Below are positions 22,591 through 64,000 of a DNA stretch of 64,000 bases, in pieces. Numbering within the stretch: position 1 is the first letter of the stretch; every line of letters begins with the position of its first letter. The stretch lies in the IMG/VR virus record IMGVR_UViG_3300046703_000335, positions 124,001-188,000 of that record, one strand, 5' to 3'. The translations under genes were made by a program, and so were the position numbers. The notes beneath the pieces are model-generated. The model made no database searches, was not told where the DNA came from, and worked only from the letters and a program-made list of their open reading frames with translations.

Positions 22591-23553
22591 TTACGAAAAG
22601 AGTCTGCTAAGTTTTGCAGCTTCACCTGCATCAAGCTCAACTTCATCCAGGGATGACATAAGTTCGATACCTTCAATAACAGAAGATGCAGCATCTTTCT
22701 CTTCTTTTTCAGCCTTTTCAGCTTTATCTTCTTCCTCTTTAGCCTCTTCCAATTTCTCTTCGGCTTTCTTAAGATCGTCCTGAGCTTGTTCAACCAACTT
22801 TTCGGCTTCTTCCTCTTTCTTTTCAGCTATCTGCTCAATTTTTTCTTCAGCCTCATCAGAAGCGCTTTTTTCTTTTTTCTTAGTTTTCTTAGCCTTCTGA
22901 TCTTTCTCTAAAGTTTTAAGAAGCTCTTTATTTTTCTTTTCTTCTCTCGTCTTAGCAATGTCAGCCCCGGTAGCAGCTTCTTTCTTAACTGCTCCATGAG
23001 ACTTCTCTACCATACCTGAATTAATGGATTTCTCAATGTCAGGAGCCTGTTCCTTCTTAAGAGTAGGAGCTAAAGTAGGCTTATGTGTACCATCAGGAAT
23101 TTGCTCTTTGTCGAGATGTCTTCCTGTGTCACAGCAGACACTCTTATTCATACCAACAACATCACGTAGTAAATTATCGACAACTGCTTTAGATGCTTGT
23201 TTACACCAAAACATCCCAGCTGTTTTTTCTGAAGCTTCTACAGACATGGGCATCTCCCCTTCTTTTTTGATTATAATGACTTTTGGTTTTTCATCACTAC
23301 CAGGAAGATCCAAAGGCTCATTCACTGGAACACCAGTTGGTATTATACCCTGTAAAGGCCCTGGGCCTTTATCACACATGCATGCATCAAACTCTTCAGA
23401 TTCAAAGTCCCCAGAAAGAATACCTGTGAACTTATCATCAGCCATCTTATTCAAGACATAAGACATTGCCTTAAGATCACGATTATACGGCGTGTGACTG
23501 GCAAAGACGCTTGATAAGCTCTCCAATCTTTTTGCTAATGCTATACGATCCAT
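22591..23553 (-). CDS. Charged scaffold-like/internal virion protein
   Basis: 320 aa, K/E-rich coiled coil. N-terminal helix MDRIALAKRLESLS and several K-x-A sites (KTA, KQA, KEA, KSA, KDA). Confidence 0.55.
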   Translation of the reverse strand: MDRIALAKRLESLSSVFASHTPYNRDLKAMSYVLNKMADDKFTGILSGDFESEEFDACMCDKGPGPLQGIIPTGVPVNEPLDLPGSDEKPKVIIIKKEGEMPMSVEASEKTAGMFWCKQASKAVVDNLLRDVVGMNKSVCCDTGRHLDKEQIPDGTHKPTLAPTLKKEQAPDIEKSINSGMVEKSHGAVKKEAATGADIAKTREEKKNKELLKTLEKDQKAKKTKKKEKSASDEAEEKIEQIAEKKEEEAEKLVEQAQDDLKKAEEKLEEAKEEEDKAEKAEKEEKDAASSVIEGIELMSSLDEVELDAGEAAKLSRLFS

Positions 23554-31917: not shown

Positions 31918-32817
31918 TTAAATGGAATATTTTACAACCGATTTCCAGAAATCATCTTGAGCTTCTTTTGGAATTTTTTCAAATTTAGGAACATTTTTTT
32001 TCGGGATTTCTACGCCTTTTTCATCTATTGGTTCTTCTTCCTCAGAGGTTCCCTCTTCTATAGATTCACCATCTATTACAGGCTCATCCTCAGGGACTGT
32101 CTCTTCTACGACTGGCTCACCTTCAACAGCACCTTGATCCTCAGGTATTTCTTCATCCTTTGGAGCTACACCATCCTCAGGAGTTTCATCTCCCATTGGA
32201 GTTTCAGCTATTTCAGGTGTCTCATCCTTATCCGAAGTTGCATCACCTTCAGGTTTCTGTTCTTCATCAGGAGTTCCATCATAATCTGATATTTCAGGTG
32301 TTTCATCAGTTTTATCTTCATCAGAAGTTTCTTCATTTTCAGAAGTTTCAGAAACATCTTTATCTTCTTCAGGGTTCACTGCAGTCATGGGAAGAGTGCC
32401 ATCAATAACAGGGGGTTCATCAGTTTTAGGTTCGACTACATCAGAAGTCTCATCCCCCTTATCAGTTCCCTGATCATCAACAGGTTCGAATATATCCGCA
32501 CCAGTATCTTCTGTATCATCAGACTCTACATAGTATTTTTCACTTGAGTCTGTAGGAACATAAGACATTTTACCACCACAAGCCAGACATGTTACGGCAT
32601 CATTCACTGTAACATTAGCGATACGTTTAACACTATGATTTTTACCAGCAATCTTACGCTTTTTATTAATATCAAGTAATGACGATGTATGATTACATCC
32701 ATCACAAACAAAGAATGTATTATCCGCAGCTTCCTTCTCAAGATCATCAGCGATCTTAAGTAATCTTTCAGCGGCAAGTTTCATATTCGATCCCATGAAA
32801 AGACTCCTTTGAGGCAA
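31918..32817 (-). CDS. Zinc-ribbon plus acidic disordered protein, probable internal head protein
   Basis: CDGCNH and CLACGG pairs, long D/E/P-rich tail, N-terminal RLLKIADDLEKEAA helix. True start may be a downstream Met. Confidence 0.55.
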   Translation of the reverse strand: MPQRSLFMGSNMKLAAERLLKIADDLEKEAADNTFFVCDGCNHTSSLLDINKKRKIAGKNHSVKRIANVTVNDAVTCLACGGKMSYVPTDSSEKYYVESDDTEDTGADIFEPVDDQGTDKGDETSDVVEPKTDEPPVIDGTLPMTAVNPEEDKDVSETSENEETSDEDKTDETPEISDYDGTPDEEQKPEGDATSDKDETPEIAETPMGDETPEDGVAPKDEEIPEDQGAVEGEPVVEETVPEDEPVIDGESIEEGTSEEEEPIDEKGVEIPKKNVPKFEKIPKEAQDDFWKSVVKYSI

Positions 32818-37126: not shown

Positions 37127-37651
37127 TTAAAAATTTGGTATAACTAAACTTGGATCATTCATATCTCTCTGTATCTGCCAATAGGTAGGATCTAAACCAG
37201 TTATTATATTTGATAATTTTTTTAGCTCTTCTAAATTTTCTTTAAAAGCTACAGACATAATTACCGTCTCACATCTACCCTTAACTGCATTAAATAGCTT
37301 AATGGCGCTATCGTAAACTCCCTCACCACGATATGCATCATGATATTCTTTAGTACCATCAAAGCTAATTCCTATCCTATCAACATGGTCAGCTATCTCT
37401 GGTCTATAAAAAGTTCCATTAGTAGTAACTCCTACTTTAAACCCTTTACTTTTTAGTATATCACAAATATCCGCTAAATTTGATATAGTAAAAGGTTCAC
37501 CACCAGTAATGTACACCCATTCTATTTCACCAGCTTTTGATAATATTGTTTCCAAACTTTTATCAATATCTATTATTGCGGTACTCTTTGCACAACATCC
37601 GGCGCATGATAAATTACAAGCATACGTAATTGGGAAAAGTATATGATTCAT
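37127..37651 (-). CDS. Minimal radical SAM enzyme
   Basis: CNLSCAGC (CxxxCxxC), ITGGEP, TTNGT, ISFDG...HDAYRG. No SPASM/twitch extension. Confidence 0.9.
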   Translation of the reverse strand: MNHILFPITYACNLSCAGCCAKSTAIIDIDKSLETILSKAGEIEWVYITGGEPFTISNLADICDILKSKGFKVGVTTNGTFYRPEIADHVDRIGISFDGTKEYHDAYRGEGVYDSAIKLFNAVKGRCETVIMSVAFKENLEELKKLSNIITGLDPTYWQIQRDMNDPSLVIPNF

Positions 37652-42520: not shown

Positions 42521-42979
42521 TTATTCTTCGTTATCTTCTTCTTCGATCTCAAGTACTAACTCAACAGTAAACTTGATCACCTTCTTATCCTCATCAATAT
42601 CTGGCATATAATCAACCTGGTCTTCCCAGATATAATCATCAAAATCCTGATTCAAATCTGATATATCAAGATTAGCATATTTTTCTTTAAGAAAGGATGA
42701 TAGTTTTGGATTGATCATTTTTTTAAGATCACCATCATGATCATCAACCCAATCCTGAAGTATTCTATTAAGTACCCTATAACTGTCCGGTGGTATACCA
42801 TCATAAGTTATATGGATATCTGCCCATACTTCAATATTTGCTGAGAATTCCTCATCATTGTTTTCTACAACATTTTCTTCATCGATATCAATGTTTTCAA
42901 ACTCAATAAAAGAGGCTTCTTTTAGCTTAAAATTTTCAGAAGCTTTTTTAGCCATAAAATCAACAACAGATGCTCTCAT
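42521..42979 (-). CDS. Highly acidic protein, probable internal head protein
   Basis: About 28% D+E by manual count. N-terminal KKAS and KEAS sites. Confidence 0.55.
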   Translation of the reverse strand: MRASVVDFMAKKASENFKLKEASFIEFENIDIDEENVVENNDEEFSANIEVWADIHITYDGIPPDSYRVLNRILQDWVDDHDGDLKKMINPKLSSFLKEKYANLDISDLNQDFDDYIWEDQVDYMPDIDEDKKVIKFTVELVLEIEEEDNEE

Positions 42980-48564: not shown

Positions 48565-49017
48565 TTATACTGCGGCTTCTTTAGCAGCTTTCCACTTCCT
48601 GTCATCGATACCGGAGATCTTTGAAATATTTTTTTCTTGAGTAATGAGAGGTTCATATGATTTAGTACTCAAACCAGCTTCTGAGGCTAATTTACTAGCA
48701 TCTGACCAAGATTCTGTCTCTACCCCTGCAACATTGGGTTTTAATTTAGTCCCACCTGAACCATAGCGTTCGATTTGGCGAATTTCAAGTTCAGTATTCT
48801 GCTTCCTTTTATCCCGACTGATCTTATACGTCTGAGCCTCTGTCCATTGCTTGAAAAAAAATCCACCATTTAAATTTAGAGATATCAGGCGTTCCATCTT
48901 TACTTCCTTATGACCCTCTTCACATCGAGGGCATAAGATATCGGGGGTTTCTTTAATGGAATGAATAACTTCTTGTATCAAGCTACAGCTATTACATCTG
49001 TACTCGTAGGTAGGCAT
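48565..49017 (-). CDS. FmdB-family zinc-ribbon protein
   Basis: MPTYEYRCNSC...CPRC...MERLIS. Confidence 0.8.
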   Translation of the reverse strand: MPTYEYRCNSCSLIQEVIHSIKETPDILCPRCEEGHKEVKMERLISLNLNGGFFFKQWTEAQTYKISRDKRKQNTELEIRQIERYGSGGTKLKPNVAGVETESWSDASKLASEAGLSTKSYEPLITQEKNISKISGIDDRKWKAAKEAAV

Positions 49018-49366: not shown

Positions 49367-50926
49367 TTATTTTATCGCTGGTCGTACTTTCGTTGGTCTT
49401 TTCATTCTTCCAGGATTTTTAACTTTCTTTGGTATAGTGGTAGGCATCCAATCAGGAGCTTCATTATTAACAACATCCACTTCACCAGTACCTATAGTAC
49501 CATCATCAAGCTCTGGGATAACCTGAGCTTCAGCAGGATTATCCTTATCTATAACCTGATCCATTAACTCAAATCCCTCGTCGACAAGCCTCTTTGATAT
49601 ATACCCACCGCTTTGACGTTTTAAGTATGCTTCTTCTATGAGTATAAAAAATACTCTTTCAGGAAACATACTGAATTCTTTAAGAGATTTTAATTTTTGT
49701 TCATCTGTCCGAGGGAACCAGGTATTCTGAAACCAATCAATAACTGTTGGCATAAAACTTTCTCTTTTAAAATACCCAGGCACTTTAGGACTTGAAGATA
49801 ATAACCTATTCTTTACATCTTTTTCTGTAAAAGGAAATTTCATCATCTTTTCCCATGCCGTTACATCAATTTTCTTGGATGGTGGAGAATATACAGGATA
49901 ATTCTTATAATGTACTTCTATGGGAGTATTCTTTATCTCATCAAAAACTGCAAGTATATGCTTACATACTCTCGCATTTTTACCCCTACCAGGGTTTCTT
50001 TTCCCATTAGGATATCTTTGACTTTTAGAAACAGTATATTGACCAGGTTCTTTCGGAGCAACTAAATCAGGTTTAAACGCAGGCATATACATGTAATTGT
50101 CTTTAACAGCATAATACTGAGCTCCGCTATACAAAAAAGCGGGGCAGGTACAACCAATATGTACAGGATAATCGACATACTTGGTTGCATCTATTTTATC
50201 ATCTCTTAAAAACTGTAGATAGACACTATGCGTCCCATATCTGGATCCCGGGGAGGTTACTCTAAAAGTAAATAACCCACGTTCATATTGTTTAGGGTTA
50301 TTTTTATTTGACCATATAGCCCTACACTTATTAGCACGCTGCAATTTTAAATCATTTTTATAATGATAATCTTTTTCAATTATCTCATCAAGAGATGCTG
50401 CAACTTTACACCTCATAACAAATTCATTGAAGTCATTACCTGATATAGTAAGATTAGCTAAAAGTTCTTCCGGAATAATATCAGAAGATAATTTTCTGGT
50501 AAGACTTATAGCAGGCTGTTGTTGATCCTCATCTGTAGTAAAATCCTGCTCTCTTGATTTTCTCCATTCTTCTAAAACGCCCCCCTCACTATATATTTTT
50601 GGGGTATTAAAGTACCCAAATTGAGTAGGATCTGAAATAGCGTTCTCAAAAGGGGGGGAGTCCTCCTGATCTTTTGGTTTATCAGAAGGACTATCATAAT
50701 CATATGGATCAGTTGTACTAAAAGAAGTATCAAGATGTTCCTTGCCTTTAAGCATATCAGGAACGGGATTATCTGGACCATGTGTAGTTTTAGCTTTATC
50801 CTTAAGATATTCCATCCAGGATTTATCAGTGTCTGTAGATACTTCTCCTGGTAAGTCATAATTCGGAGGACAATCCTCCGGTTTTTCGAAATATCTTGCT
50901 AAAACTCTTCTGACCCTTATATCCAT
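49367..50926 (-). CDS. SWIM zinc-finger domain protein
   Basis: CTCPAF...CKHILAV. Acidic N-terminus with a KVAAS site. Confidence 0.7.
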   Translation of the reverse strand: MDIRVRRVLARYFEKPEDCPPNYDLPGEVSTDTDKSWMEYLKDKAKTTHGPDNPVPDMLKGKEHLDTSFSTTDPYDYDSPSDKPKDQEDSPPFENAISDPTQFGYFNTPKIYSEGGVLEEWRKSREQDFTTDEDQQQPAISLTRKLSSDIIPEELLANLTISGNDFNEFVMRCKVAASLDEIIEKDYHYKNDLKLQRANKCRAIWSNKNNPKQYERGLFTFRVTSPGSRYGTHSVYLQFLRDDKIDATKYVDYPVHIGCTCPAFLYSGAQYYAVKDNYMYMPAFKPDLVAPKEPGQYTVSKSQRYPNGKRNPGRGKNARVCKHILAVFDEIKNTPIEVHYKNYPVYSPPSKKIDVTAWEKMMKFPFTEKDVKNRLLSSSPKVPGYFKRESFMPTVIDWFQNTWFPRTDEQKLKSLKEFSMFPERVFFILIEEAYLKRQSGGYISKRLVDEGFELMDQVIDKDNPAEAQVIPELDDGTIGTGEVDVVNNEAPDWMPTTIPKKVKNPGRMKRPTKVRPAIK

Positions 50927-50927
50927 T

Positions 50928-52202
50928 TTACACTTCCGCTAAAAGATCATTAAGATCAATATCATCGTCCTTGGCATAAATTACTTCTGCCTCTGAAGCA
51001 TCAAAGGGGGTATCTTCACCTGAAGAATACACTGCGGTAGGTTCCTCAAAATCATTATTCGATGAAAAAGTAACCTCACCAGCATCAACTTCACCAGAAG
51101 CACCTACAGTCACTCTCGAAGTGATTCCATCTTCAGTTTGAATACTTGACCTTGTATCTCGGGATACCTTACTTATCACAACAGCTTCCTGACCTTCAGT
51201 AATAACTGTGACCCCTTTAGCTACTGTAGGTTTAGTATCCACTATAATTGGAGCACTATCGATAAGTTCTTCAACAGAATCTGTAACATTCATAACCGGA
51301 GCATTAGAAGTAATTTTAGCAGGAGCCTTCTTAGCAGGAGCCTTCTTAACAGGAGCCTTCTTAGCAGGAGCTTTTTTAACCGGAACCTTATTAGAAGAAA
51401 CCTTATGTTGTTCCATCTGAGCCTGAGTACTTGACCCTACATCTGTTGTTTGTGTCGATGGGTAAGATGTCCCAGCAACTTCTACATCAGTAGCAAATGT
51501 TTCCATTTTTACAGGAGCTTTAACTACATTACTTTTATTATTCGATGTCTTACGAACTTCTACACCAGATGATTCATAATCAATAGTTAATTTTTTTCTA
51601 TCCTCAGTACTGGCTTGTTTACCTGTATAATTTGTTGCTTTGGCAACATTACCTTCATGAGATAACGTTGCACTTTTTGCATTAGTATTGCTGCCAATAG
51701 CTACGCTATCCTTATTTGTAACTGGAGCGCCATCATAAGCAGATACTTTTCTAACTTCATTGGCATCCTCGTTAACAACAGTAACTTCTCTTTTAATATC
51801 ATCCAGATCACTGGTAACTTCTCTTTTACCATTAACCAATTTAATCTCAGGTGTCTTATCATAACCCTTTAAAAGTTTATCGATGCTATCACTGGGAGGA
51901 TTCTGTATTCCAACGAGGGGATCAGAAGTGTAATCACTATGCTCTACAACCCTACCTCCTGTAGCATTACGAGATACAGATGCAAGCTGCTTCTCGACAG
52001 GTTTTAATGATGTCCCCGTAAGAGCTATCCATTCCCCTACTACTTTAGATAATGAACGTGCGGTACCCTGCTCCCCACGAAGTATCACATTAAGACCATC
52101 AAATTGTAAAATCTCCCCTCTTTTTACATAGAGAGAAGTCTTACCATTATCCAGACTTACGGTAAAATCCTGAAGTGCTGAGTATTCCTTTAAATTTGAC
52201 AT
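50928..52202 (-). CDS. Low-complexity protein with KKAP(A/V) repeats
   Basis: KVPVKKAPAKKAPVKKAPAKKAPAK and an acidic C-terminus. Confidence 0.6.
   Translation of the reverse strand: MSNLKEYSALQDFTVSLDNGKTSLYVKRGEILQFDGLNVILRGEQGTARSLSKVVGEWIALTGTSLKPVEKQLASVSRNATGGRVVEHSDYTSDPLVGIQNPPSDSIDKLLKGYDKTPEIKLVNGKREVTSDLDDIKREVTVVNEDANEVRKVSAYDGAPVTNKDSVAIGSNTNAKSATLSHEGNVAKATNYTGKQASTEDRKKLTIDYESSGVEVRKTSNNKSNVVKAPVKMETFATDVEVAGTSYPSTQTTDVGSSTQAQMEQHKVSSNKVPVKKAPAKKAPVKKAPAKKAPAKITSNAPVMNVTDSVEELIDSAPIIVDTKPTVAKGVTVITEGQEAVVISKVSRDTRSSIQTEDGITSRVTVGASGEVDAGEVTFSSNNDFEEPTAVYSSGEDTPFDASEAEVIYAKDDDIDLNDLLAEV
51317..51385. repeat. 15-nt tandem repeat encoding KKAP(A/V)
   Basis: About four to five units of tagcaggagccttct. 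Confidence 0.8.
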
Positions 52203-52244
52203 ATCTGTATCTCCTTTTTATGTTATTATGATTTGATTTATATG

Positions 52245-53525
52245 TTATATATTCAATGGTAACTTTTTTTCATTATCCCTATCTTTACCATTAGAAAATA
52301 CTATATTATTTACTTTAAACGTCTTACCTTTAAAAGTCTCATCCCCTATAAAATTGTCCATGGAATCTTTTTTAACATATGCTATAGTAACATGGGGATT
52401 GTATGTCGGGAATGTGCTTTCATTTTTTATCTTTTTTACGAGATTATAATACAATTTCTCAAGATCTCCAGATTCTACTTCAATCTTAAGAACATCATAT
52501 TCTTTTTTATCCTTAAATGCATTAATCAAACCAAGGCGTACTTCAAAAGGTTTAATTTCTCCAATAATCTTTGCAGTCCTTATAGGAGAATCATCTGTAA
52601 TCCCATAAAGCACTGTTACATGAATATCATCCTCTCGACCTTTTGAATTATCCCCTTCTACATATAATTTATTACCTGGTACATTATCCTTACCCCATTT
52701 TATAATTGACTTAGATAAGGCATCCGGTAAATTGATTTTAGTACACGAATACTCATACTTCACTCCGGTTTTTGCAACTTTTGTACGTACATCAACGTAG
52801 GTACTAGAAGGAACATCATAAGTGAAGATAATTGATTCTGGATTGCGATTAGAAAATGTTTTTTTTACATGTTCAATATCTTTATAATTCTTAAGAAATG
52901 CCAAAGAGTTATCCGGATCAGAGAGACTTTTAATACTAAATGTGTTAAATCCTGTAGTAGCTTCACCATACTTTGGAATTCTTATAGTCTTACCAGAGAA
53001 AATATCATTCACTACTTTTGGGATGGAATCCGTATCCAGGCGTTCAAATTTAAAATCTATAGCCCTTGAGGTACCTTTATCTGGAGATACGAAAGGCATA
53101 GCCATTTTTGAAAGTGTATTCGCGCACTTTCTTATTTTTGAGCTAATACTTTTCAAATTTTTTTCCTTTAGTTTATTTAAAAACTTTTTTACACTGTCGA
53201 TACTGTCAAATTCCTTGACTATGCCACTACGCCTACCTATAAGTTCAAGAAATTTCTTTTCCCTATCTGATTGGTTACCGCCATTATAGAAAATAACATA
53301 ATCTGAATTTATCATCCCAGCTATTTCTTTATAAGTATTCTTTGCTGGATCATAATTATTATCAAAAGGGTCTAATAGGTATAAGTCTCCTCCAAACTCT
53401 TTCTCGATTTCTTTACGCCAACTGTTATTCTGACAGTCTCCACCAAGAAAAATAACAGGGGTACCAGATTTTGGAGCGTTAACAATATCTTTATCAGATA
53501 AATAGGATGTAATTAAACGAATCAT
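52245..53525 (-). CDS. Nucleoside-2-deoxyribosyltransferase-like domain fused to an Acb1/gp57B-like 2H phosphoesterase
   Basis: N-terminal IFLGG...SWR...DPF...E...SDYVIFY. C-terminal YEYSC...GREDDIHVTVLYG...YNPHVTIAY (two HxT motifs). Confidence 0.75.
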   Translation of the reverse strand: MIRLITSYLSDKDIVNAPKSGTPVIFLGGDCQNNSWRKEIEKEFGGDLYLLDPFDNNYDPAKNTYKEIAGMINSDYVIFYNGGNQSDREKKFLELIGRRSGIVKEFDSIDSVKKFLNKLKEKNLKSISSKIRKCANTLSKMAMPFVSPDKGTSRAIDFKFERLDTDSIPKVVNDIFSGKTIRIPKYGEATTGFNTFSIKSLSDPDNSLAFLKNYKDIEHVKKTFSNRNPESIIFTYDVPSSTYVDVRTKVAKTGVKYEYSCTKINLPDALSKSIIKWGKDNVPGNKLYVEGDNSKGREDDIHVTVLYGITDDSPIRTAKIIGEIKPFEVRLGLINAFKDKKEYDVLKIEVESGDLEKLYYNLVKKIKNESTFPTYNPHVTIAYVKKDSMDNFIGDETFKGKTFKVNNIVFSNGKDRDNEKKLPLNI

Positions 53526-53725
53526 ATTCTAAGTAATTCTCGTGATAGTTCTCTAATAATATCTGAAGCGCACTTTTTCTTTTTATCCTTATCTCTCCAC
53601 ATACCTAAACATTGAGCGATACTTTGATCTCTATCCTTGTTTTCAATGCGGACACATTGATGCATACAATCACCCATAAATTTTTGCTTGTCTCCATCAT
53701 ATTTGTTAGGATCAGGCATCATCAT
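53522..53725 (-). CDS. Small Cys-containing phage protein
   Basis: KQKFMGDCM...DQSIAQCLGMWR, followed by KKCASDIIRELSREL. Confidence 0.6.
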   Translation of the reverse strand: MMMPDPNKYDGDKQKFMGDCMHQCVRIENKDRDQSIAQCLGMWRDKDKKKKCASDIIRELSRELLRI

Positions 53726-53973
53726 TCCCCTGTCTTAAGTAAATCACTATCAGTAGTCTTCTTATTTTCCGAAAAAGATTGGGCTGCTTTCGCACCTAAA
53801 ACTCCAGCAATCAAAAGTGCTTCTGATGTCCCTAACGAAATAAAACCTCCACCCTTTATCATAGAAACAATATTATGTGCAGCAAAAACTATCATAATAG
53901 TTATACATACTACAAAAGACATCAAACGCATCATACTAATTTTTCCATCAGGACCAGTGAACAAACTACTCAT
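53722..53973 (-). CDS. Small two-TM membrane protein (holin-like)
   Basis: KISMMRLMSFVVCITIMIVF...LLIAGVLGAKAAQ with a charged C-terminus. Confidence 0.5.
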   Translation of the reverse strand: MSSLFTGPDGKISMMRLMSFVVCITIMIVFAAHNIVSMIKGGGFISLGTSEALLIAGVLGAKAAQSFSENKKTTDSDLLKTGE

Positions 53974-53995
53974 AATGCCCCCAATATCCTAAAGG

Positions 53996-54580
53996 TTACT
54001 CTGAAACTGCTTTTGTATATTCATCCATAGCAATTTTTAATTTTTTCACTAATAAAGTATATCCTCGCTTTTTCAAACAATCCTTAATATATGATAGTCT
54101 CTCAGCTGGATAACGTACTTCATCTATCTTTTTTGAAGAAATATTACGGGATGCTTCTTTACTTTTTGCATATTCTATTAAAGGTCTCATCTGTGCTTTT
54201 ACATCAGGAGTAGCTTTATTATATGGACCAATCAAACGCTCTTCTCTCATAGCCCCTGTTTCAACCATATCCTCAATTTCTTTTTTAGGAACTAATCTCT
54301 TACCATCCCACATCATCAACTCTTCTTTACCAGTAGAAGAATTCAGTTCAATAACAAATTCTCCCTTTTCATACGGTTTGATATTAGGATCAGTAGGCTC
54401 ATGAAAAGTTTTACCAGGTGTTCTATCACTCAATAATCGTGGACTATGCTTGGTTTCCCCAAAAAAAGGATACCCAGTAAGAGTCGCTTCCTTAATAGCT
54501 TTTAGCTCAGAAGCTTCTTTACTAAAACCACGTTCATTAAGAATATCAGAAATCTTATTTAGTCTACTTAAGATACTCAT
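53996..54580 (-). CDS. Probable internal head protein
   Basis: N-terminus RLNKISDILNERGFSKEASEL, shared with 55398..56156. KEA sites. Confidence 0.55.
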   Translation of the reverse strand: MSILSRLNKISDILNERGFSKEASELKAIKEATLTGYPFFGETKHSPRLLSDRTPGKTFHEPTDPNIKPYEKGEFVIELNSSTGKEELMMWDGKRLVPKKEIEDMVETGAMREERLIGPYNKATPDVKAQMRPLIEYAKSKEASRNISSKKIDEVRYPAERLSYIKDCLKKRGYTLLVKKLKIAMDEYTKAVSE

Positions 54581-55296
54581 TATTTACCACCTTTAAGATA
54601 TTTCTTTAAAAGCTTATCAAAATACGCTATTTTATCCTTTGGTAAGTAGCTTTTAGCTCCTCCAAGATAATATGAAAAGCTATCCGCCCAATCCTCCCAA
54701 GGGGATCTTTTTGCATAGAATCTTGTGAATCTAGCATATGGTGAATAATAATAATCTCCTATTACTTCAGGAGTACCTTTTTCATTAATATGTATTCTTT
54801 TAAGTCCTGGTTTTGGATATTTTGACCAACCAGATAATTCCTGCCAATCTTTTTTAAGAGATAGATCCCCATCTTCTCCCTGTGCTTCATCCCACCCATG
54901 ACCAAGCTCATGATAAAGAGTTTGATCAAATTTATTTATTATAGACCCATTATCAGGATCTATAATTAACTTGGGGTCATTAAGCAATTGATCATTCATG
55001 ATAAGAGTATTATTAACATATTTACCATGATTCGGATAGTATTCCTTGGAGGGACCTAAGTCATCAAATGATAAAGATTTTATACCACACATCTTTACAA
55101 TTTCTGGAGATATTCTCTGAAGGCTACTATATAATGCCTGGATACACTCAGGATTAGTTTTTCTATCTACATTAATACCATAAATTTCTTTGATACCAGA
55201 AAACAAATCAGAGTTACGACTATGTTCTTCTAAATCAGCCGCAATTCTCCGTAGACGAAAAATAAGTTCTATTGGTGTACTTTTTATAGTCATCAT
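54580..55296 (-). CDS. Zincin-type metallopeptidase
   Basis: YHELGHGWD (HExxH) and downstream YA..SPWEDWADSF. Confidence 0.75.
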   Translation of the reverse strand: MMTIKSTPIELIFRLRRIAADLEEHSRNSDLFSGIKEIYGINVDRKTNPECIQALYSSLQRISPEIVKMCGIKSLSFDDLGPSKEYYPNHGKYVNNTLIMNDQLLNDPKLIIDPDNGSIINKFDQTLYHELGHGWDEAQGEDGDLSLKKDWQELSGWSKYPKPGLKRIHINEKGTPEVIGDYYYSPYARFTRFYAKRSPWEDWADSFSYYLGGAKSYLPKDKIAYFDKLLKKYLKGGK

Positions 55297-55310
55297 TACA
55301 CTAAAAAAAA

Positions 55311-55326
55311 TATTAATGTATTATTA
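55311..55326 (-). promoter_or_regulatory. Putative late promoter motif
   Basis: Minus strand TAATAATACATTAATA, just after a terminator. Confidence 0.5.
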
Positions 55327-55332
55327 TTTAAT

Positions 55333-55363
55333 AAAAAAGGTATTGGGCTACATACCCAATACC
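55333..55363 (-). terminator. Rho-independent terminator
   Basis: GGTATTGGG/CCCAATACC stem plus T6 on the minus strand. Confidence 0.75.
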
Positions 55364-55397
55364 CTTATTAATATCTTACTATTCCTAAAAAATGAAT

Positions 55398-56156
55398 TTA
55401 ACTATTATGTGGTAAATTAGATCTATCTGTTTTTACCATTGGAGCATTAGGGGTAAAAGGAATTTCACCTGATCGGACTAACTTATCACGAAGACTCACA
55501 CCACCATGCATAATATCCCCTTCTAATTTCTTCTTACCATCAGTATAAGTAATCAATCGAGCGGTATTACCAAATGCATCCTTTAGTTCTTCAACATTTT
55601 TTACAGTTTTATCAGCTTGTCCAGGTTTTCGAGAATTTTGTGCATCATCTACATTTACGCTATCCTGAAAACGAGACTTATGATGCTCAGCTTCTTGTTT
55701 ATGATAATTCTCCATAACTATCGCAAAACTTTTAGGATCCCCTTTTTCAAGTTGTCTCAAATCCTTAGCAGTATAAGTAACTGTGCCTCCCTGAGGAGCC
55801 TTAACTGTAATGGGGCTACCTTTTGCTTCTACCTGAGAAAGAAATGAAGAAGCAAGTACCATAGCTAACATAGCCAAGGATCTTATCTTAGGACTAACAC
55901 CCATAGCTTCCTTATCCCCTATACCCTCTGTAGAAGGCGTATTCAAGTATTTCGCAACAATCTCAGCAGCATTCTGGGGATTAAGCGTAATACCTACCTC
56001 ACGTGCCAATTGAACTGCTTCAGGGGGGAAAGTAGTCATGGCTTCCAAAGATTCAGAAATCTTATCAATTTCATAAGCTTCTTTTAAATACCCATGAGAC
56101 TCTACTGAATCAGCAATTTTATCAAGAGCTTTAGCTATCTTCAAAAATTCACACAT
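55398..56156 (-). CDS. Probable internal head protein with an internal signal-peptide-like segment
   Basis: LDKIADSVESHGYLKEAYEI N-terminus. KEA-MGVSPKIRSLAMLAMVLASSFLSQVEA at residues 82-111. Confidence 0.6.
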   Translation of the reverse strand: MCEFLKIAKALDKIADSVESHGYLKEAYEIDKISESLEAMTTFPPEAVQLAREVGITLNPQNAAEIVAKYLNTPSTEGIGDKEAMGVSPKIRSLAMLAMVLASSFLSQVEAKGSPITVKAPQGGTVTYTAKDLRQLEKGDPKSFAIVMENYHKQEAEHHKSRFQDSVNVDDAQNSRKPGQADKTVKNVEELKDAFGNTARLITYTDGKKKLEGDIMHGGVSLRDKLVRSGEIPFTPNAPMVKTDRSNLPHNS

Positions 56157-56306: not shown

Positions 56307-56813
56307 ATGTTGAATAAGAAACTAATAATCATGTTGACCGTAATTTTAATGTCAGTAATTAATATCTCTGCAAAAAATATCCTCAGCATCTATGATAGTC
56401 ATAAAAAGCTATATACCAGCAAGTCACTGAACCCTGCTTATATTGGACCTCTATTTGCCACTGGGGGAGCCATGACAGACATTAACCGGTATATCAACAA
56501 TATGGCACCAGAGAAGATTGGGCATTTCACCAGTAATACTTTAGTTCTTATTGAAACAGACACCCTCCTAAATCAGGTGTATACATTTAATAAAGTGACA
56601 GCCTATAATGTGACAAAAGATACCAATAGCTTTAATATAATGCACATAGTTGGTACTCTGGGGGGAGAAAAGTATGATATAATTGTAGAAATAAAAGAGG
56701 GACCAGAGTATGATCGGATCATCACGATCTATAAGAATCTTAAACCTATAACAATAATTTTGTGGTTAGATAATTCAAAAATTACTCAGAAGAAAGCTCC
56801 TACTACTATCTAA
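56307..56813 (+). CDS. Exported protein (moron-like)
   Basis: Signal peptide MLNKKLIIMLTVILMSVINISA. Opposite strand, with its own promoter and terminator. Confidence 0.7.
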   Translation: MLNKKLIIMLTVILMSVINISAKNILSIYDSHKKLYTSKSLNPAYIGPLFATGGAMTDINRYINNMAPEKIGHFTSNTLVLIETDTLLNQVYTFNKVTAYNVTKDTNSFNIMHIVGTLGGEKYDIIVEIKEGPEYDRIITIYKNLKPITIILWLDNSKITQKKAPTTI

Positions 56814-59650: not shown

Positions 59651-61660
59651 TTAGCGAGCTATCTTAACCCTTGTAATTGCCAATGGGTTATGGCACCCAA
59701 TACCTAAATTTTCGAAGACTGAAAATCCTATTCTTCTTGCCTTTGGATCATCAGCAGATAGTACTGTAAGTTCGGTACGTACAGGAATGCGCCCGAAAAA
59801 TTCTGGTTCTGCGCAAACATAAGCATAACCAGGATTAACTTTTCTGCTGACGATGATCTGAGCACCCCAAACGGTACCAAGTAGACCACTCTTAAGCAAT
59901 GTCCCTTGAGTTTCAATATCAAGAACGTCTCTTCCCCATTTTCTTAAATCTGCAAAGTCAAGAGCGTTCATGAAAATACGAGCAACTCGAAGATCATGAG
60001 TCTCAATACGTGCAAAAGCGTCAATCAAGTTTGCAGGTGTAAGAGGAGCAACAGCATTGATCTGTGCGTTTACATATGCACTTCCAAGATTGTCAAAACC
60101 AAACTGAGAAACTGCATCCATAACATCAAAGGCACGTGCATCTTCAGCAGCTTGAATTTGAGCTTTTGCCAAATCCTGTGCGCGTTCGATAAGGTCAAAA
60201 CGACGTTCTTTGATCTGTGTCAAAGGCAGTTCAGGATTCGATGCTATTTCGAAAAGAGGGAATATCACACGGCGAGGTTTTGTGATCGCCAGAATGTTTT
60301 CACCTTCTTCTCCGACAACGAAAGCAGTGACGTTAGGATCTTTGTCGTAAATTGGCAGCGCACCATCAGGGAGCTGTTCTACGAGAAAAGCCTTACGTGC
60401 AACTGACGTATAATCTCTGCGAAGACGCAGAGGCTGGATCCACTTTGTTACTACCCTATTTAAGGGCGTATGAGTCTTTCAACTCATATCTCATGGTTAC
60501 CCATGAGTTCAGACTGTATCACTACCTGTTATATACAGGTACTCGGCATGTCTTGACAAATTACTCTGTCAAGGTAGGTCTTATCGCCATTACCAAAACT
60601 TGGTATTAGGCTTCCCTCAGTCGTTGAACCTTCAATGGGGTTTCCCCCAAAGCTTGGCTGCTGATTGTCCTTTGAACGATATCTCTTAGGTAACTTATAG
60701 ATCAAATCATTAGTAATATTATCACGGATATACTCATAAGCAGTATCTCTTGATTCCTTCAAAACCCTAATATGGCATTCACCATCAGAGTTCTCAGTAA
60801 CACTTACAACCAGGTTTAAAACATCCTTAAAGATATCTATAACCAGTTCTTTGTTGTTTTTGAAAAAGCTATCATAAGACACTATAGTAAACCCGTAATC
60901 ACCAACCGCCCCATCATCCATCCACCAAAAAGACAACCCTACACCAGTAAGTTCACTTAGTAGTTCAGCACTCAGTACCTTTGTACCTTCAGGATAAAAC
61001 TTTTTTCTTAACTCTGTAAATTGATGCAAGGCATAACTCCTTGCATCAACATATGAAAAAAGTTCTCCACCGGATATAAAAGCTCTTTCACCATAAAATA
61101 CTTTAGCAGTAAAAAGGCTTCATTATCTCTGCTTTTCTAAGCAATAGTTGCTCTTGTTTCACACTATGCCTACAAAGCCAATATCCAGTCCCAGATGATT
61201 GTACTGCAATGCAGGAATCCCCAAACAAACTCCCATGCAGAAATTCTTTCTGATAGCTATTTAACGGAACCAATCTTAATGCGTTACGATTCAAATGATA
61301 GCCCTTATTTGTACTAATACCATAGATACTTCTTAAGGTACAAACTACTCTATCAGTTAAACCATATTTTTCACCTATCTCAATATCGCATAAACCAGCA
61401 TTGATGTACTCTTCAACAAGCACATCTTCCGGCAAAACACTTATAAGTCTTGCCAGTTTCTCTTCGCTGATTATTACGTTATTGATCTTCATACCTACCC
61501 ATCGTTCAAAGGATGTTCCAGACAATTTACCGAGTTTTACGTCCACCATCCAGAATCAATTAATGGACGCCGCTAACTTTGCACGGCCAGAAGCAGTCTT
61601 AATGTAATCTCCAATGATCTGTTGTTTCAGTTCATTAGTGATTGTGTTTGTTCCTTCCAT
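59651..61660 (-). CDS. Major capsid protein (HK97 fold), spliced: exon 1 61660-61563 joined to exon 2 60440-59651, 295 aa
   Basis: AGGAGG RBS. Exon 1 MEGTNTITNELKQQIIGDYIKTASGRAKLAAS + AT|G joins in frame to IQPLRLRRDYTSVARKAFLVEQLPDGALPIYD...GEEGE...IGFSVFENLGIGCHNPLAITRVKI. Follows the scaffold and decoration genes. Confidence 0.9.
60441..61562 (-). mobile_element. Group I intron (1122 nt) in the major capsid gene
   Basis: 5' exon ends in U (GTCCAT) pairing with IGS GTGGAC. IGS CTGGAT pairs with 3' exon ATCCAG (P10). P AAATTGTCTGGAA, Q AATCAGCAG, R TTCAACGACT, S GATACAGTCT. P3 ACTCGGT/GCCGAGT. Terminal omega-G. Confidence 0.93.
60529..61492 (-). pseudogene. Intron-encoded LAGLIDADG homing endonuclease with a 1-nt frameshift
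   Basis: LHGSLFGDS lies in 61103..61549 and LSFWWMDDG in 60529..61029. Removing one T from the T5 run at 61111-61115 gives a continuous 320-aa ORF (...MKPFTAKVFYGERAF...ALHQFTELRKKFY...). Confidence 0.8.
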
Positions 61661-62439: not shown

Positions 62440-63447
62440 TTAATTAAAAATTTCTCTTACATCCGGAGCAGTAGACCATAGACTTGATAAGTCACTGGAA
62501 CCACTTGAAGAAGCTTCTTTCTTAACCATACCGGAAAGTTTTGAAGCACCCTTCTTGATAGGAGAAGGCATAACACCACTGAAAATCTGATCAAGAAGAC
62601 TTGCATCTTTTGATGAGCCTTCTTCTTCATCTTCTTCTTTTTTATCCTTGGAGGAAGCTTCGACTTCTTCTTCATCTTCTTCTTTTTTGGCAGAAGCTTC
62701 GACTTCTTCTTCGTCTTTGCCTACTTCTTTTTCAAGCTCTTCAGCTTGCTTTTTCAGGCTGGCAAGTTTTTCTTTTTTCTTTTTAATGTCCAGATCCTTA
62801 GTGCCGGCTTCTTTTTCTTTCTTATCATCTTCGTCTTTGTCGGCAGAGGCATCCTTCTCTTCTTTATCCTTATCATCTTCATCTTTGTCAGCAGAAGCAT
62901 CCTTCTCTTCTTTATCCTTGTCATCTTCATCTTTGTCAGCAGAAGCATCCTTCTCTTCATCTTCTTCATCAGAAGAATCAGAAGCAGCTTTTGCGATCAT
63001 CTGAGCGAGACCTTCTTGGTTTGCAAGAGTCGCATTAAGGCCCTCTTCAGGAAGATGCATAAGAATACCCGCCTGCTTCTCGATAATCTCGTCTGTAGCA
63101 CCAGGAAGCATTCTCTGTGAAGCAATAATAGCTTTGACAGCTTTCTCTTCAAGTCTACGAGCACTTGCGATAGCTTCTTGAGCAGCATGTTTATCAATAA
63201 GAGGAGCATGACCAGTCTCTTCACGTTTCTGATCATCTTTATTTACTTTGTCTTTATTAACGCCTTCATTCCATGCTTCAGGATCACCCTTAGCATATTC
63301 ACCGACACTTGGATTATTCTTGCTGTGTCCAGTATCATTCATATCAAAAACATCATTGTCAATTCCAGAACCCTTATCTTCAACTTGGGCACCTGGTTTT
63401 GACTTCATATCCGAAGCTAATCTGTTAGTCAAACGATTACGAGACAT
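62440..63447 (-). CDS. Capsid scaffolding protein
   Basis: Highly charged, disordered/coiled-coil, upstream of decoration and MCP. Many K-x-A sites. Confidence 0.7.
   Translation of the reverse strand: MSRNRLTNRLASDMKSKPGAQVEDKGSGIDNDVFDMNDTGHSKNNPSVGEYAKGDPEAWNEGVNKDKVNKDDQKREETGHAPLIDKHAAQEAIASARRLEEKAVKAIIASQRMLPGATDEIIEKQAGILMHLPEEGLNATLANQEGLAQMIAKAASDSSDEEDEEKDASADKDEDDKDKEEKDASADKDEDDKDKEEKDASADKDEDDKKEKEAGTKDLDIKKKKEKLASLKKQAEELEKEVGKDEEEVEASAKKEEDEEEVEASSKDKKEEDEEEGSSKDASLLDQIFSGVMPSPIKKGASKLSGMVKKEASSSGSSDLSSLWSTAPDVREIFN
62822..62958. repeat. 48-nt tandem repeat (EEKDASADKDEDDKDK, about 3 copies) in scaffold
   Basis: Near-identical DNA units visible directly. Confidence 0.85.
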
Positions 63448-63544: not shown

Positions 63545-64000
63545 TTACTCTTCAAATTGAGATAAAATCTTAGCCCATGAAGCTAACTTTTTACACTCTC
63601 TCTGACTTGGCTTGCGACCTATCTCAACTATCATCTTTGTGAAAAAGGGCACCATTCCTGTTGATCCAAGTTTGACTCTGGATAAAGTCTTAACTGCATC
63701 TGTACCAACAGGGATATTAGAAGCATTCTTATCTATAAAGTGCAATATCCCTAAAACATCATCACGAGTGTACCCATACTTTTTAAATTGTTTCCAATTC
63801 TTAGTATTAGATAAAATCATAATACCATTGTACAGCCGATCATTTTTTGTATCTCTTGCAGAAGCTAAAATCTTTTTAAAACTAGCGGACTTGTTCACTA
63901 AGTTATCATTTGTAGAAGTCTCTTCATCCGAAGGACGTCCACTATCTCCGCCATCTTGCTTAGCCTGATCCTTCATGATCTCTCTACGAATCTGATTAAG
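63545..64000 (-). CDS. C-terminal part of a head-morphogenesis protein (possibly the prohead protease), 5'-truncated
   Basis: Frame open to the window edge (LNQIRREIMKD...). Identity inferred only from its position upstream of the scaffold. Confidence 0.45.
   Translation of the reverse strand, partial: LNQIRREIMKDQAKQDGGDSGRPSDEETSTNDNLVNKSASFKKILASARDTKNDRLYNGIMILSNTKNWKQFKKYGYTRDDVLGILHFIDKNASNIPVGTDAVKTLSRVKLGSTGMVPFFTKMIVEIGRKPSQRECKKLASWAKILSQFEE

What the first reader, a model, noticed from the sequence alone, without database searches (positions are those of the whole stretch)
49367..56156. Capsid-loading system: shared targeting helix plus K-x-A maturation sites on diverse cargo proteins
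Seen: otherwise unrelated late proteins share an amphipathic helix. Examples are RLNKISDILNERGFSKEASEL (53996), ALDKIADSVESHGYLKEAYEI (55398), RLRRIAADLEE (54580), RLLKIADDLEKEAA (31918), KIRKCANTLSKMA (52245) and ALAKRLESLS (22591). K-x-A(S/A) motifs fall at apparent domain boundaries and recur throughout the scaffold. Known: T4 internal proteins use a short capsid-targeting sequence removed by the prohead protease. Inference: an analogous but distinct address-and-cleave code packages enzymes (2H phosphoesterase, zincin, SWIM, acidic protein) for injection with the DNA.
Basis: partly seen in the sequence, partly recalled or inferred. Interest (0 to 1): 0.8.

Follow-up and report, generated by a model that had tools for sequence, protein, structure and literature searches.

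The report
Phage head-protease cut sites and helix tag
A giant peat-bog phage related to phage G carries a short motif, K-x-A-S/A, that looks like its head-maturation protease's cut site, and a portable helical hairpin on several otherwise unrelated proteins; together they resemble phage T4's system for loading proteins into the capsid, but packaging itself is unproven.

Summary
The window is part of a 210-kb jumbo myophage from peat whose capsid protein is 41% identical to phage G's.

- **Helix.** Four of the six quoted examples fit one strict motif, with 0.004 expected by chance. It is the first helix of a ~35-aa helix-turn-helix module. The module is conserved in orthologs. In relatives it also occurs internally and at C-termini.
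- **K-x-A-S.** This is the most over-represented of about 40,000 short patterns (31 vs 8). It is enriched about 7-fold in head-module proteins (portal, protease, scaffold-like protein) and across relatives in the capsid protein's N-arm. It is not enriched in tail proteins, the decoration protein or enzymes. It also forms a conserved island just after the catalytic domain in 113 diverse homologs of the prohead protease.
- **Control.** The same scan recovers T4's known I/L-x-E motif.

K-x-A-S/A is therefore probably the protease's cut site. Within the finding's own block the support is uneven: p194, the SWIM protein and the 424-aa protein carry conserved or enriched sites, while the zincin and the 2H enzyme do not. 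The address function, virion location and injection remain inference. I rate this a new variant of a known kind.

The parts
55398..56156 (-). 252-aa protein. Its N-terminal helix-turn-helix module (residues 5-44, nt 56025-56144) reads LKIAKALDKIADSVESHGYLKEAYEIDKISESLEAM. A hydrophobic segment lies at about residues 89-110. The gene is present in only some relatives.
   Evidence: (66.6 bits; shuffled maximum 5.6). A terminator-like hairpin follows at 55366-55336.
54580..55296 (-). 238-aa zincin-like protein with an invariant HExxH (H129, E130, H133). The N-terminal helix PIELIFRLRRIAADLEEHSR is encoded at nt 55216-55275. It has no K-x-A-[SA] site.
   Evidence: AF2 gives one long helix at residues 8-39 running into the core. 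The fold resembles M34 zincins only weakly. The family is not enriched in sites (1 vs 0.7).
53996..54580 (-). 194-aa protein (p194). It has an N-terminal helix-turn-helix (nt 54476-54580) containing K21-E-A-S (nt 54509-54520). A disordered linker and a small core follow. A second helix-turn-helix copy lies at the C-terminus (nt 54002-54124).
   Evidence: The family has 15 K.A[SA] sites vs 2.3 expected.
53722..53973 (-). 83-aa protein with two hydrophobic helices, read from the sequence as membrane-type. It is conserved in the block.
   Evidence: The membrane assignment is read directly from the sequence and was not tested further.
53522..53725 (-). 67-aa Cys-rich protein. It has a conserved K-C-A-S followed by a C-terminal amphipathic helix (KKKKCA|SDIIRELSRELLRI).
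   Evidence: The family has 5 sites vs 0.6 expected.
52245..53525 (-). 426-aa protein. It has an N-terminal alpha/beta domain and an internal helix plus K-x-A (SISSKIRKCANTLSKMA, nt 53100-53150). The C-terminal 2H phosphoesterase domain is Acb1-like and carries two HxT motifs.
   Evidence: K-x-A-h-P-[YF] is conserved in orthologs, but the family has no excess of K.A[SA] (1 vs 1.8).
50928..52202 (-). 424-aa protein. It has a small conserved N-terminal domain, a long low-complexity middle with a KKAPAKKAP run, and a conserved acidic C-terminus (DIDLNDLLAEV).
   Evidence: The family has 12 K.A[SA] vs 3.8 expected. The KKAP run is absent in L003 and L004.
49367..50926 (-). 519-aa SWIM-type zinc-finger protein with invariant C259, C261, C321 and H323. 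The N-terminal helix IRVRRVLARYFE is encoded at nt 50885-50920. K174-V-A-A-S (nt 50393-50407; K174, A176 and A177 invariant) stands at the start of the conserved domain.
   Evidence: The family has 11 sites vs 2.1 expected.
62440..63447 (-). 335-aa scaffold-like acidic protein, between the protease gene and the decoration-like and capsid genes. It has nine K-x-A-[SA] sites, including three KDAS repeats and a conserved C-terminal KKGAS...KKEAS.
   Evidence: (weak phrog_4708 match). The family has 89 sites vs 17.7 expected.
63545..64000 (-). 3' end of the prohead protease gene (950 aa in this genome; the rest lies beyond the window). This C-terminal part has three K-x-A-S sites.
59654..61660 (-). 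Major capsid protein gene in two pieces: nt 61660 to about 61577, and 60440 to 59654. A 1,136-bp insertion (60441-61576) separates them. The N-arm carries K-T-A-S and K-L-A-A-S.
31918..32796 (-). 292-aa protein (p292). Its N-terminus KLA|AERLLKIA|DDLEKEA|AD is encoded at nt 32722-32781. A zinc ribbon and an acidic low-complexity region follow. A conserved K-[ED]-A lies about 12 residues from the C-terminus.
   Evidence: The family has 15 sites vs 1.4 expected.
22591..23553 (-). 320-aa protein (p320) encoded between the sheath and tube genes. It has its own conserved N-terminal helix (MDRIALAKRLESLS). Two K-x-A-[SA] sites are conserved (WCKQA|S and KKEA|A). It occupies the position of Tunturi_5 gp328, annotated 'DNA ejection protein'.
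   Evidence: The family has 17 sites vs 4.6 expected.
42521..42979 (-). 152-aa acidic protein (p152) with two N-terminal sites (MRASVVDFMAKKA|SENFKLKEA|SFIEF).

Best explanation
The block lies just downstream of the head-morphogenesis module of an uncultivated jumbo myophage of the phage G lineage. That module runs portal, small ORFs, protease, scaffold-like protein, decoration-like protein, capsid protein. Two separate codes are present.

1. **Cut site.** K-x-A-S/A is most likely the recognition site of the phage's serine prohead protease, which has conserved His and Ser-Met-Gly-Cys. The protease would cut itself just after its catalytic domain. It would chop the scaffold-like protein at many sites and trim the portal and the capsid protein's N-arm. 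It would also process a set of proteins of unknown function: p194, the SWIM protein, the 424-aa protein, p292, p320, p152 and the 67-aa protein.
2. **Helix.** Single-helix variants exist. I infer that it bundles with like modules on small head-module proteins or with the scaffold core. That would draw the attached domains into the assembling prohead, and cleavage would then free them.

**Shown:** both motifs are non-random, and so are their distribution and their conservation. **Inferred:** cleavage, which bond is cut, binding to the core, virion residence and injection.
For: **Head module and lineage:**

**K.AS over-representation:**
- K.AS is the top pattern of about 40,000.
- Enrichment is 7.0x in the head module and 7.7x in p320/p292/p152. 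It is 1.2x in tail proteins and 0.8x in enzymes.
- Family-wise sums over relatives give the same split, with sheath, tube and decoration protein at zero.
- Sites are biased to protein termini (14 of 31 vs 8.3 expected, p=0.012).

**Link to the protease:**
- K278-x-A280 is invariant in 7 proteases, including phage G gp19 and Tunturi_5 gp331.
- In 113 representatives the columns read [KR] 95%, A 96%, S 53%, inside variable flanks.
- Tunturi_5 gp328 'DNA ejection protein' has 10 sites vs 1.7 expected, and its scaffold-position gp332 has 6 vs 1.3.

**Method control:** the same scan puts I.E first and L.E fourth in T4 head proteins only.

**Helix module:**
- New module hits of 17-35 bits appear in other head-region ORFs of relatives, against a shuffled maximum of 5.6.
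- AF2 of p194 shows terminal hairpins separated from the core by a disordered linker.
- The helix is kept in orthologs.
Against: - No proteomic or biochemical datum exists for this clade. The phage G structure paper is not held, and the 2025 proteome tables are not held.
- The finding's own block is only weakly enriched in sites (4 vs 1.8, p=0.10).
- The zincin and 2H families show no enrichment.
- In the 252-aa protein type the K-E-A is followed by Y, L, A or E, so K-E-A there may be a structural feature of helix 2.
- The module also occurs internally and C-terminally.
- In the zincin the helix is continuous with a core helix.
- The block contains an 83-aa membrane-type protein, and a hydrophobic segment lies in the 252-aa protein.
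- A terminator-like hairpin separates the 252-aa gene from the rest.
- Ortholog counts are not independent events.
Confidence: 0.5

Rival explanations
1. The helix-turn-helix is only an oligomerisation or structural element of assembly-accessory and other phage proteins. The enzymes of the block (zincin, 2H phosphoesterase, SWIM protein) act in the cytoplasm and are never packaged. K-x-A-S is a protease site only in the true head proteins, and its occurrences in the block are incidental or structural.
For: - The block is only weakly enriched in sites, and the zincin and 2H families show none.
- The module is found at internal and C-terminal positions.
- The module resembles designed antiparallel coiled coils.
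- The zincin helix is continuous with the core.
- Membrane-type proteins lie in the block, and a terminator-like hairpin lies inside it.
Against: - The block is syntenic with the head module in all relatives.
- K-x-A-[SA] sites are conserved in p194, the SWIM protein and the 67-aa protein within otherwise variable surroundings.
- The same module sits on small ORFs between the portal and protease genes.
Confidence: 0.3
2. K-x-A-S/A is not a cleavage site. It is another kind of functional motif, such as a helix-capping or binding motif or a modification site, shared by head-interior proteins.
For: - No cleavage data exist.
- Several sites lie in predicted helices: p194 K21 at the start of helix 2 and the helical context of SWIM K174.
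- The capsid N-arm sites lie in a region that is conserved throughout, so they carry little information.
Against: - The conserved island in variable linker lies exactly at the end of the protease domain in 113 family members.
- Repeated sites run through the acidic scaffold-like protein.
- Sites cluster at termini.
- Tail and decoration proteins show no enrichment.
- The same statistic recovers the true cleavage motif in T4.
Confidence: 0.12
3. Both signals are chance or compositional artefacts of K/A/E/S-rich amphipathic helices.
For: - The helix pattern was defined after the fact.
- Low-complexity repeats, such as the three KDAS repeats, inflate the counts.
Against: - Shuffles expect 0.004 helix matches against 4 observed.
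- All permutations of K, A and S in all spacings give 5-13 against 31.
- The unbiased scan ranks K.AS first.
- Both signals are conserved across relatives at 40-60% identity.
Confidence: 0.03

Closest known systems
Phage T4 capsid targeting sequence (CTS) with gp21 prohead protease (internal proteins IPI-III, Alt)
   Same: - Unrelated proteins share a short terminal element.
- A prohead protease in the head module cuts many head-interior proteins and chops the scaffold at a short, low-information motif.
- Multiple sites lie in propeptides.
- T4 facts are from PMC9026906.
   Different: - The T4 motif is [LI]-x-E, which is not enriched here (325 vs 294).
- The T4 CTS is about 10 N-terminal residues ending in the cut site. 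Here the element is a 20-40-aa helix or hairpin, it is not always N-terminal, and it is not always followed by a site.
- Targeting here is untested.
phiKZ, 201phi2-1 and SPN3US prohead protease (gp175/gp245) with N-terminal propeptides on inner-body and ejection proteins
   Same: - It is a jumbo myophage with many head-interior proteins.
- N-terminal propeptides carry redundant sites, and the protease cleaves itself.
- Facts are from PMC10052503 and PMC9026906.
   Different: - The motif there is S/A/G-x-E, cut after Glu. It is not enriched here (259 vs 282).
- The capsid lineage is different.
- No shared helix-turn-helix module has been described there.
Herpesvirus assemblin (release and maturation sites, Ala|Ser bond)
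   Same: - Phage prohead proteases share the assemblin fold (Cheng et al. 2004, as cited in PMC10052503).
- Assemblin cuts itself at a site just after its catalytic domain and cuts the scaffold near its C-terminus at x-x-A|S (established knowledge).
- The layout here is the same: [KR]-x-A-S after the catalytic domain, and K-x-A-S sites near the scaffold-like protein's C-terminus.
   Different: - No significant sequence match to any solved protease was found.
- A preference for Lys at P3 is not the herpesvirus consensus.
- The scissile bond here is unknown.
P22 scaffolding protein C-terminal helix-turn-helix coat-binding domain; encapsulin cargo-loading peptides
   Same: A small terminal helical element is enough to carry a protein into an HK97-fold shell (established knowledge). 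The module here is likewise a predicted helix-turn-helix on a flexible tether.
   Different: - No sequence similarity is detectable.
- The module here is mostly N-terminal.
- Binding to the capsid or scaffold protein is untested.
Bacillus phage G (gp14 portal, gp19 protease, gp26 decoration protein, gp27 capsid protein) and Tunturiibacter phage Tunturi_5
   Same: - The capsid protein is 41% (phage G) and 48% (Tunturi_5) identical.
- The protease is homologous and carries the same K-x-A-S island.
- K-x-A-[SA] clusters are present in the phage G portal and in Tunturi_5 gp328 and gp332.
   Different: - The finding's block (zincin to SWIM protein) has no homolog in cultured phages.
- Phage G's capsid N-arm lacks the Lys.

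Membership tests
T4-type CTS / internal-protein loading system | A prohead protease is encoded in the head module | tested here: met
   The protease matches phrog_18299 'head maturation protease'. His109 and Ser170 (SMGC) are invariant. The family has 1,100 representatives.
T4-type CTS / internal-protein loading system | Cleavage motif [LI]-x-E | tested here: not met
   [LIV].E gives 325 observed vs 294 expected. The top motif here is K.AS. The T4 control recovers I.E and L.E.
T4-type CTS / internal-protein loading system | A short N-terminal sequence is shared by unrelated packaged proteins and ends in the cut site | tested here: inconclusive
   A shared helix lies at residues 7-15 of 5 proteins. 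K-x-A-[SA] follows within 10 residues in p194 and p292 and lies inside the helix in the 118-aa ORF. It is absent near the zincin helix and reads K-E-A-Y in the 252-aa protein. The module is also internal and C-terminal in relatives.
T4-type CTS / internal-protein loading system | The proteins are present in virions, processed, and injected | not testable with these tools
   No isolate or proteome exists for this clade. The phage G data tables are not held.
phiKZ-like propeptide processing | Cleavage after Glu at S/A/G-x-E | tested here: not met
   [SAG].E gives 259 observed vs 282 expected.
Assemblin-fold serine prohead proteases (HK97 gp4 / T4 gp21 / herpesvirus) | A His/Ser catalytic pair in a ~230-aa domain, with self-cleavage at the domain's end | tested here: inconclusive
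   Conserved His and Ser and a conserved [KR]-x-A-S island after the domain are seen. The fold was not modelled, and no solved-structure sequence match was found. Cleavage was not assayed.
2H phosphoesterase (Acb1-like) for ORF 52245-53525 | Two H-x-T/S motifs and a Pfam match above cutoff | tested here: met
   PF13563 scores 30.9 bits (cutoff 27) and PF23474 Acb1 scores 27.2 (cutoff 27). HVTV and HVTI are conserved. Activity is untested.
SWIM zinc finger for ORF 49367-50926 | The CxCx(n)CxH signature | tested here: inconclusive
   Pfam scores 16.7 bits, below the 19.6 cutoff. C259, C261, C321 and H323 are invariant in orthologs.
Zincin metallopeptidase for ORF 54580-55296 | HExxH and a zincin fold | tested here: inconclusive
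   H129, E130 and H133 are invariant. Pfam Peptidase_Mx is below cutoff. Foldseek's best hits are PPEP and lethal-factor M34 domains at E 5e-3 and TM 0.34.

The most novel reading that the evidence does not exclude
A large, globally distributed lineage of phage-G-like jumbo phages uses a prohead protease with K/R-x-A|S specificity, laid out like herpesvirus assemblin with a self-release site after the catalytic domain. It also uses a portable helix-turn-helix 'loading tag'. If so, the set of capsid-internal and injected proteins can be read directly from sequence. That set would include enzymes such as a SWIM protein and, if they are packaged uncleaved, an Acb1-like 2H phosphoesterase and a zincin, delivered with the DNA as pre-made counter-defence.
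Probability: 0.25. Interest if true: 0.75.

Novelty: new variant of a known kind. Interest (0 to 1): 0.55.

Why it matters
- **Prediction from sequence.** Prohead-protease specificities are known by experiment for T4-like and phiKZ-like phages (PMC9026906, PMC10052503). A sequence-derived motif for the phage G lineage would predict which of the many unknown proteins of these uncultivated giant phages sit inside the capsid. The protease family has more than 1,100 representatives, and 1,980 capsid-protein homologs were found.
- **Directly testable.** The prediction can be checked in two cultured members, phage G and Tunturi_5.
- **Practical use.** If the helix-turn-helix module really loads cargo, it would be a new protein-packaging tag for HK97-fold shells.
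- **Biology.** It would also suggest that these phages inject enzymes along with their DNA.

Tried and rejected
- **DNA search.** Searching the block against cultured phages gave no match.
- **tblastn of block proteins.** The zincin gave one weak hit, and the SWIM protein gave none.
- **PHROGs and Pfam.** They gave nothing for p194, the 252-aa protein, p292, p320, p152 or the 477-aa protein.
- **ESM Atlas.** The helix-turn-helix gave a best score of 0.83, which is within noise.
- **Word-indexed search.** The module alone found only two close homologs.
- **PDB searches.** The protease sequence gave nothing. The module profile gave nothing against PDB or Pfam apart from a resemblance to designed coiled coils.
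- **Mycobacteriophage cluster C.** Its head region was tried as a test of K-x-A and was uninformative. There was a hint of R-x-A-[SA] in gp90.
- **Papers.** The phage G structure paper is not held. The supplements of the 2025 phage G proteome paper are not held. The Tunturi paper has no proteomics.
- **Rfam.** No family reached threshold in the window, so the capsid-gene insertion could not be typed.
- **RNA runs.** Only distant relatives hold the capsid gene in RNA runs, so expression and splicing could not be tested.
- **K-I-A-D as the cut site.** I considered that the K-I-A-D core of the helix is itself the cut site. I rejected this because Asp is not enriched after K-x-A.
- **T4-like and phiKZ-like motifs.** Both were rejected.

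Full report
**What the window is.** The window is bases 124,001-188,000 of IMG/VR contig IMGVR_UViG_3300046703_000335 (210,408 bp). The best DNA holders are peat metagenomes. Almost all genes are on the minus strand. The capsid protein is 41% identical to Bacillus phage G gp27, 48% to Tunturiibacter phage Tunturi_5 and 73.5% to an uncultured 485-kb phage.

Reading on beyond the window's end in locus L013 gives the head module. Its order is portal, five small ORFs (118, 102, 138, 207 and 184 aa), prohead protease, a 335-aa acidic scaffold-like protein, a decoration-like protein and the capsid protein. The finding's block follows the capsid gene after a mobile LAGLIDADG/methylase-like ORF. The block has the same order in seven to nine relatives at 36-96% identity. 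That order is: [252 aa], zincin-like 238 aa, 194 aa (p194), 83-aa membrane-type protein, 67 aa, 2H phosphoesterase 426 aa, 424 aa, and SWIM-type 519 aa.

**The helix.** Four fit L.[KR]I[AS][AD].[LV][EN]. All four start at residues 7-15 of their proteins, with 0.004 matches expected in residue shuffles. The pattern was written after the fact, so that number overstates the case. The orthologs give independent support:
- The zincin keeps the helix in 7 of 8 relatives, once only with a non-ATG start.
- p194 keeps it in 7 of 7.
- The 252-aa family keeps it in every member seen, and p292 in 6 of 6.

The examples at 52245 (internal) and 22591 score within noise against the profile. The SWIM and 2H proteins have family-specific N-terminal helices that resemble the motif only loosely.

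The helix is not a free-standing signal. In p194 and the 252-aa protein it is the first half of a ~35-aa helix-turn-helix with the approximate consensus LDKIAxxLExxG[FY]xKEAxxLDxVSxxLE. p194 has a second copy at its C-terminus.

A profile of the module finds further copies well above the shuffled maximum of 5.6 bits in other head-region ORFs of relatives. These are internal (L031_18969 at 35 bits, L019_12007 at 17 bits) and C-terminal (L029_18067 at 23 bits, L014_12459 at 20 bits). The profile also gives weak matches, near the shuffled maximum, in the 207-aa and 106-118-aa ORFs between the portal and protease genes.

AlphaFold2 was run on shallow alignments and gave medium confidence. For p194 it gives hairpins at residues 3-35 and 153-193, a disordered stretch at 36-67 and a small core. 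For the zincin it gives one long helix at 8-39 that runs into the well-predicted core. The module matches nothing in PDB or Pfam. Its nearest sequence look-alike is a designed antiparallel coiled coil.

**K-x-A-S/A.** I scanned all tri-residue patterns in five spacings (about 40,000) over the 65 proteins read from this genome. K.AS ranks first, with 31 observed against 8.0 expected (p=5e-10). Every other order or spacing of K, A and S gives 5-13. After K-x-A the next residue is S 31 times and A 17 times, and no other residue exceeds 9. The distribution is the telling part:

| Protein group | Observed | Expected |
|---|---|---|
| Head module | 22 | 3.1 |
| p320, p292, p152 | 8 | 1.0 |
| Tail and baseplate proteins | 2 | 1.7 |
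| Enzymes and mobile-element proteins | 2 | 2.6 |
| The finding's own six proteins | 4 | 1.8 (p=0.10) |

A giant tail-region ORF of more than 3,037 aa has only 2 sites. Summing over orthologs in all loci gives the same split:
- **Enriched:** scaffold-like protein 89 vs 17.7; capsid protein 21 vs 2.8; 207-aa ORF 21 vs 3.1; p292 15 vs 1.4; p194 15 vs 2.3; p320 17 vs 4.6; SWIM protein 11 vs 2.1; 424-aa protein 12 vs 3.8.
- **Not enriched:** sheath 0 vs 2.9; decoration protein 0 vs 1.5; tube 0; zincin 1 vs 0.7; 2H protein 1 vs 1.8.

Orthologs are not independent, so these sums show conservation rather than extra significance. Sites lean towards protein ends (14 of 31 within 30 residues of an end, 8.3 expected, p=0.012).

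As a control of the method, I ran the same kind of scan on T4. It ranks I.E first and L.E fourth in head-module proteins and not in other T4 proteins. That is T4's experimentally known gp21 motif (PMC9026906).

**Link to the protease.** The protease has invariant His109 and Ser170 (SMGC). In seven sequences, including phage G gp19 and Tunturi_5 gp331, K278-x-A280 is invariant and followed by S in six of seven (R in one). It lies just after the conserved domain. An exhaustive search found 1,100 representatives. In 113 of them of suitable length, aligned, the four columns read K/R 95%, A/V/T 88%, A 96%, and S 53% (A 9%). No residue dominates in the ten columns before or the columns after.

A conserved four-residue island in a variable linker at the end of a protease domain is what a self-release site looks like. 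In Tunturi_5 the protein annotated 'DNA ejection protein' has 10 sites (1.7 expected) and the scaffold-position protein has 6 (1.3 expected). In phage G the portal has 3 (0.34 expected), and two small proteins begin MKRLISKTA|A and MKRLIKKA|S.

I therefore think K-x-A-S/A is the cut site of this protease family. I cannot tell which bond is cut.

- *Supported by conserved sites.* p194 has K-[EHS]-A-[SA] in 6 of 7 orthologs. In the SWIM protein K174, A176 and A177 of K174-V-A-A-S are invariant, at the start of the conserved domain. The 67-aa protein has K-x-A-S before a C-terminal helix. p292 has three sites in its first 24 residues and one about 12 residues from its end. p320 has two conserved sites at domain junctions.
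The 2H protein has a conserved K-x-A-h-P-[YF] at a domain junction, with a hydrophobic residue after Ala.
- *The coupling fails.* In 252-aa-type modules K-E-A is followed by Y, L, A or E, so there it may simply be part of the fold. Address and cut site are thus two signals that sometimes coincide, not one code.

The block also holds an 83-aa membrane-type protein. A hydrophobic stretch lies in the 252-aa protein. Terminator-like hairpins follow the capsid gene and the 252-aa gene. Nothing available shows that any of these proteins is in a virion.

**Cargo identities.**
- The 2H assignment is sound (Pfam above cutoff, two HxT motifs).
- The SWIM assignment rests on invariant Cys, Cys, Cys and His residues with a sub-threshold Pfam score.
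- The zincin assignment rests on an invariant HExxH and a weak fold match to M34 peptidases.

**Comparison and novelty.** The logic matches T4's capsid targeting sequence with gp21, and the propeptides of phiKZ and SPN3US (PMC9026906, PMC10052503). The differences are a cut motif not reported in the papers I could search and a longer, position-flexible helical module. Neither [LIV]-x-E nor [SAG]-x-E is enriched here.

The layout also echoes herpesvirus assemblin, from established knowledge. That layout has a site after the catalytic domain, sites at the scaffold's C-terminus, and a small residue pair A-S. It is a resemblance, not a tested relationship. I found no report of this motif in the papers searched, but that library is incomplete.

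I rate the finding a new variant of a known kind. Confidence is moderate for the cut site (about 0.65), lower for targeting (about 0.4) and low for injection of enzymes (about 0.25).

Noticed in passing
window 60441-61576 (within the capsid gene, 59654-61660, minus strand): The major capsid gene is split by a 1,136-bp insertion carrying ORFs 61103-61549 and 60529-60921. Contigs of relatives join 60440 directly to 61577, and intact 293-295-aa capsid genes exist in L002, L003, L006 and L007. The insertion sits at the codons of K-L-A-A-S|M. No Rfam intron family matched. A different insertion splits the same gene in L004.
   Followed up: partly
L013:8051-11476 and L013:13891-16743 (same contig, beyond the window's end): In this genome the portal (1,141 aa vs 643 aa in L010) and the prohead protease (950 aa vs 537 aa in L006) carry large in-frame insertions. 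Many protease representatives are likewise about 900-1,400 aa with the match split into 2-4 stretches, which suggests inteins.
   Followed up: no
window 30167-31177 (-): A 336-aa actin-fold protein matches Pfam Volactin (PF25216) at E=1.4e-61 over its full length. This is an unexpected cytoskeletal gene among the tail and head genes of a phage.
   Followed up: no
window 1-9111 (-): One open reading frame of more than 3,037 aa runs off the window's start. It lies next to the baseplate and tail genes and has only 2 K-x-A-[SA] sites.
   Followed up: no
window 44175-48296 (-): A 1,373-aa protein combines TPR repeats with family 1 and family 2 glycosyltransferase domains. It is conserved next to the block in relatives (L030, L031).
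   Followed up: no
window 56884-59466 (-) and 56307-56813 (+): Between the capsid gene and the block lie two extra ORFs. One is an 860-aa LAGLIDADG endonuclease with a weak DNA-methylase match; unrelated ORFs replace it in L003 and L007. The other is an opposite-strand 168-aa ORF with a signal-peptide-like N-terminus that recurs in L006 and L025.
   Followed up: partly
window 27248-28681 (-): A 477-aa protein of unknown function has a conserved K-N-A-S-S at about residue 51.
   Followed up: partly
L008 (phage G) 646-912 and 16927-17442: Phage G gp13 and gp38 begin MKRLISKTA|A and MKRLIKKA|S, and gp17 begins LKRLIKKS. This may be a short shared N-terminal peptide ending in the same motif in the cultured relative.
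   Followed up: no
window 37127-37651 (-); 26672-27151 and 48565-49017 (-): There is a 174-aa radical SAM protein (Pfam E=8e-15). There are also two small ORFs with near-identical N-termini (MPLYEFKC / MPTYEYRC). Pfam confirms Zn_ribbon_8 for 48565-49017; 26672-27151 was not scanned. The 48565 family ends in K-E-A-A.
   Followed up: no
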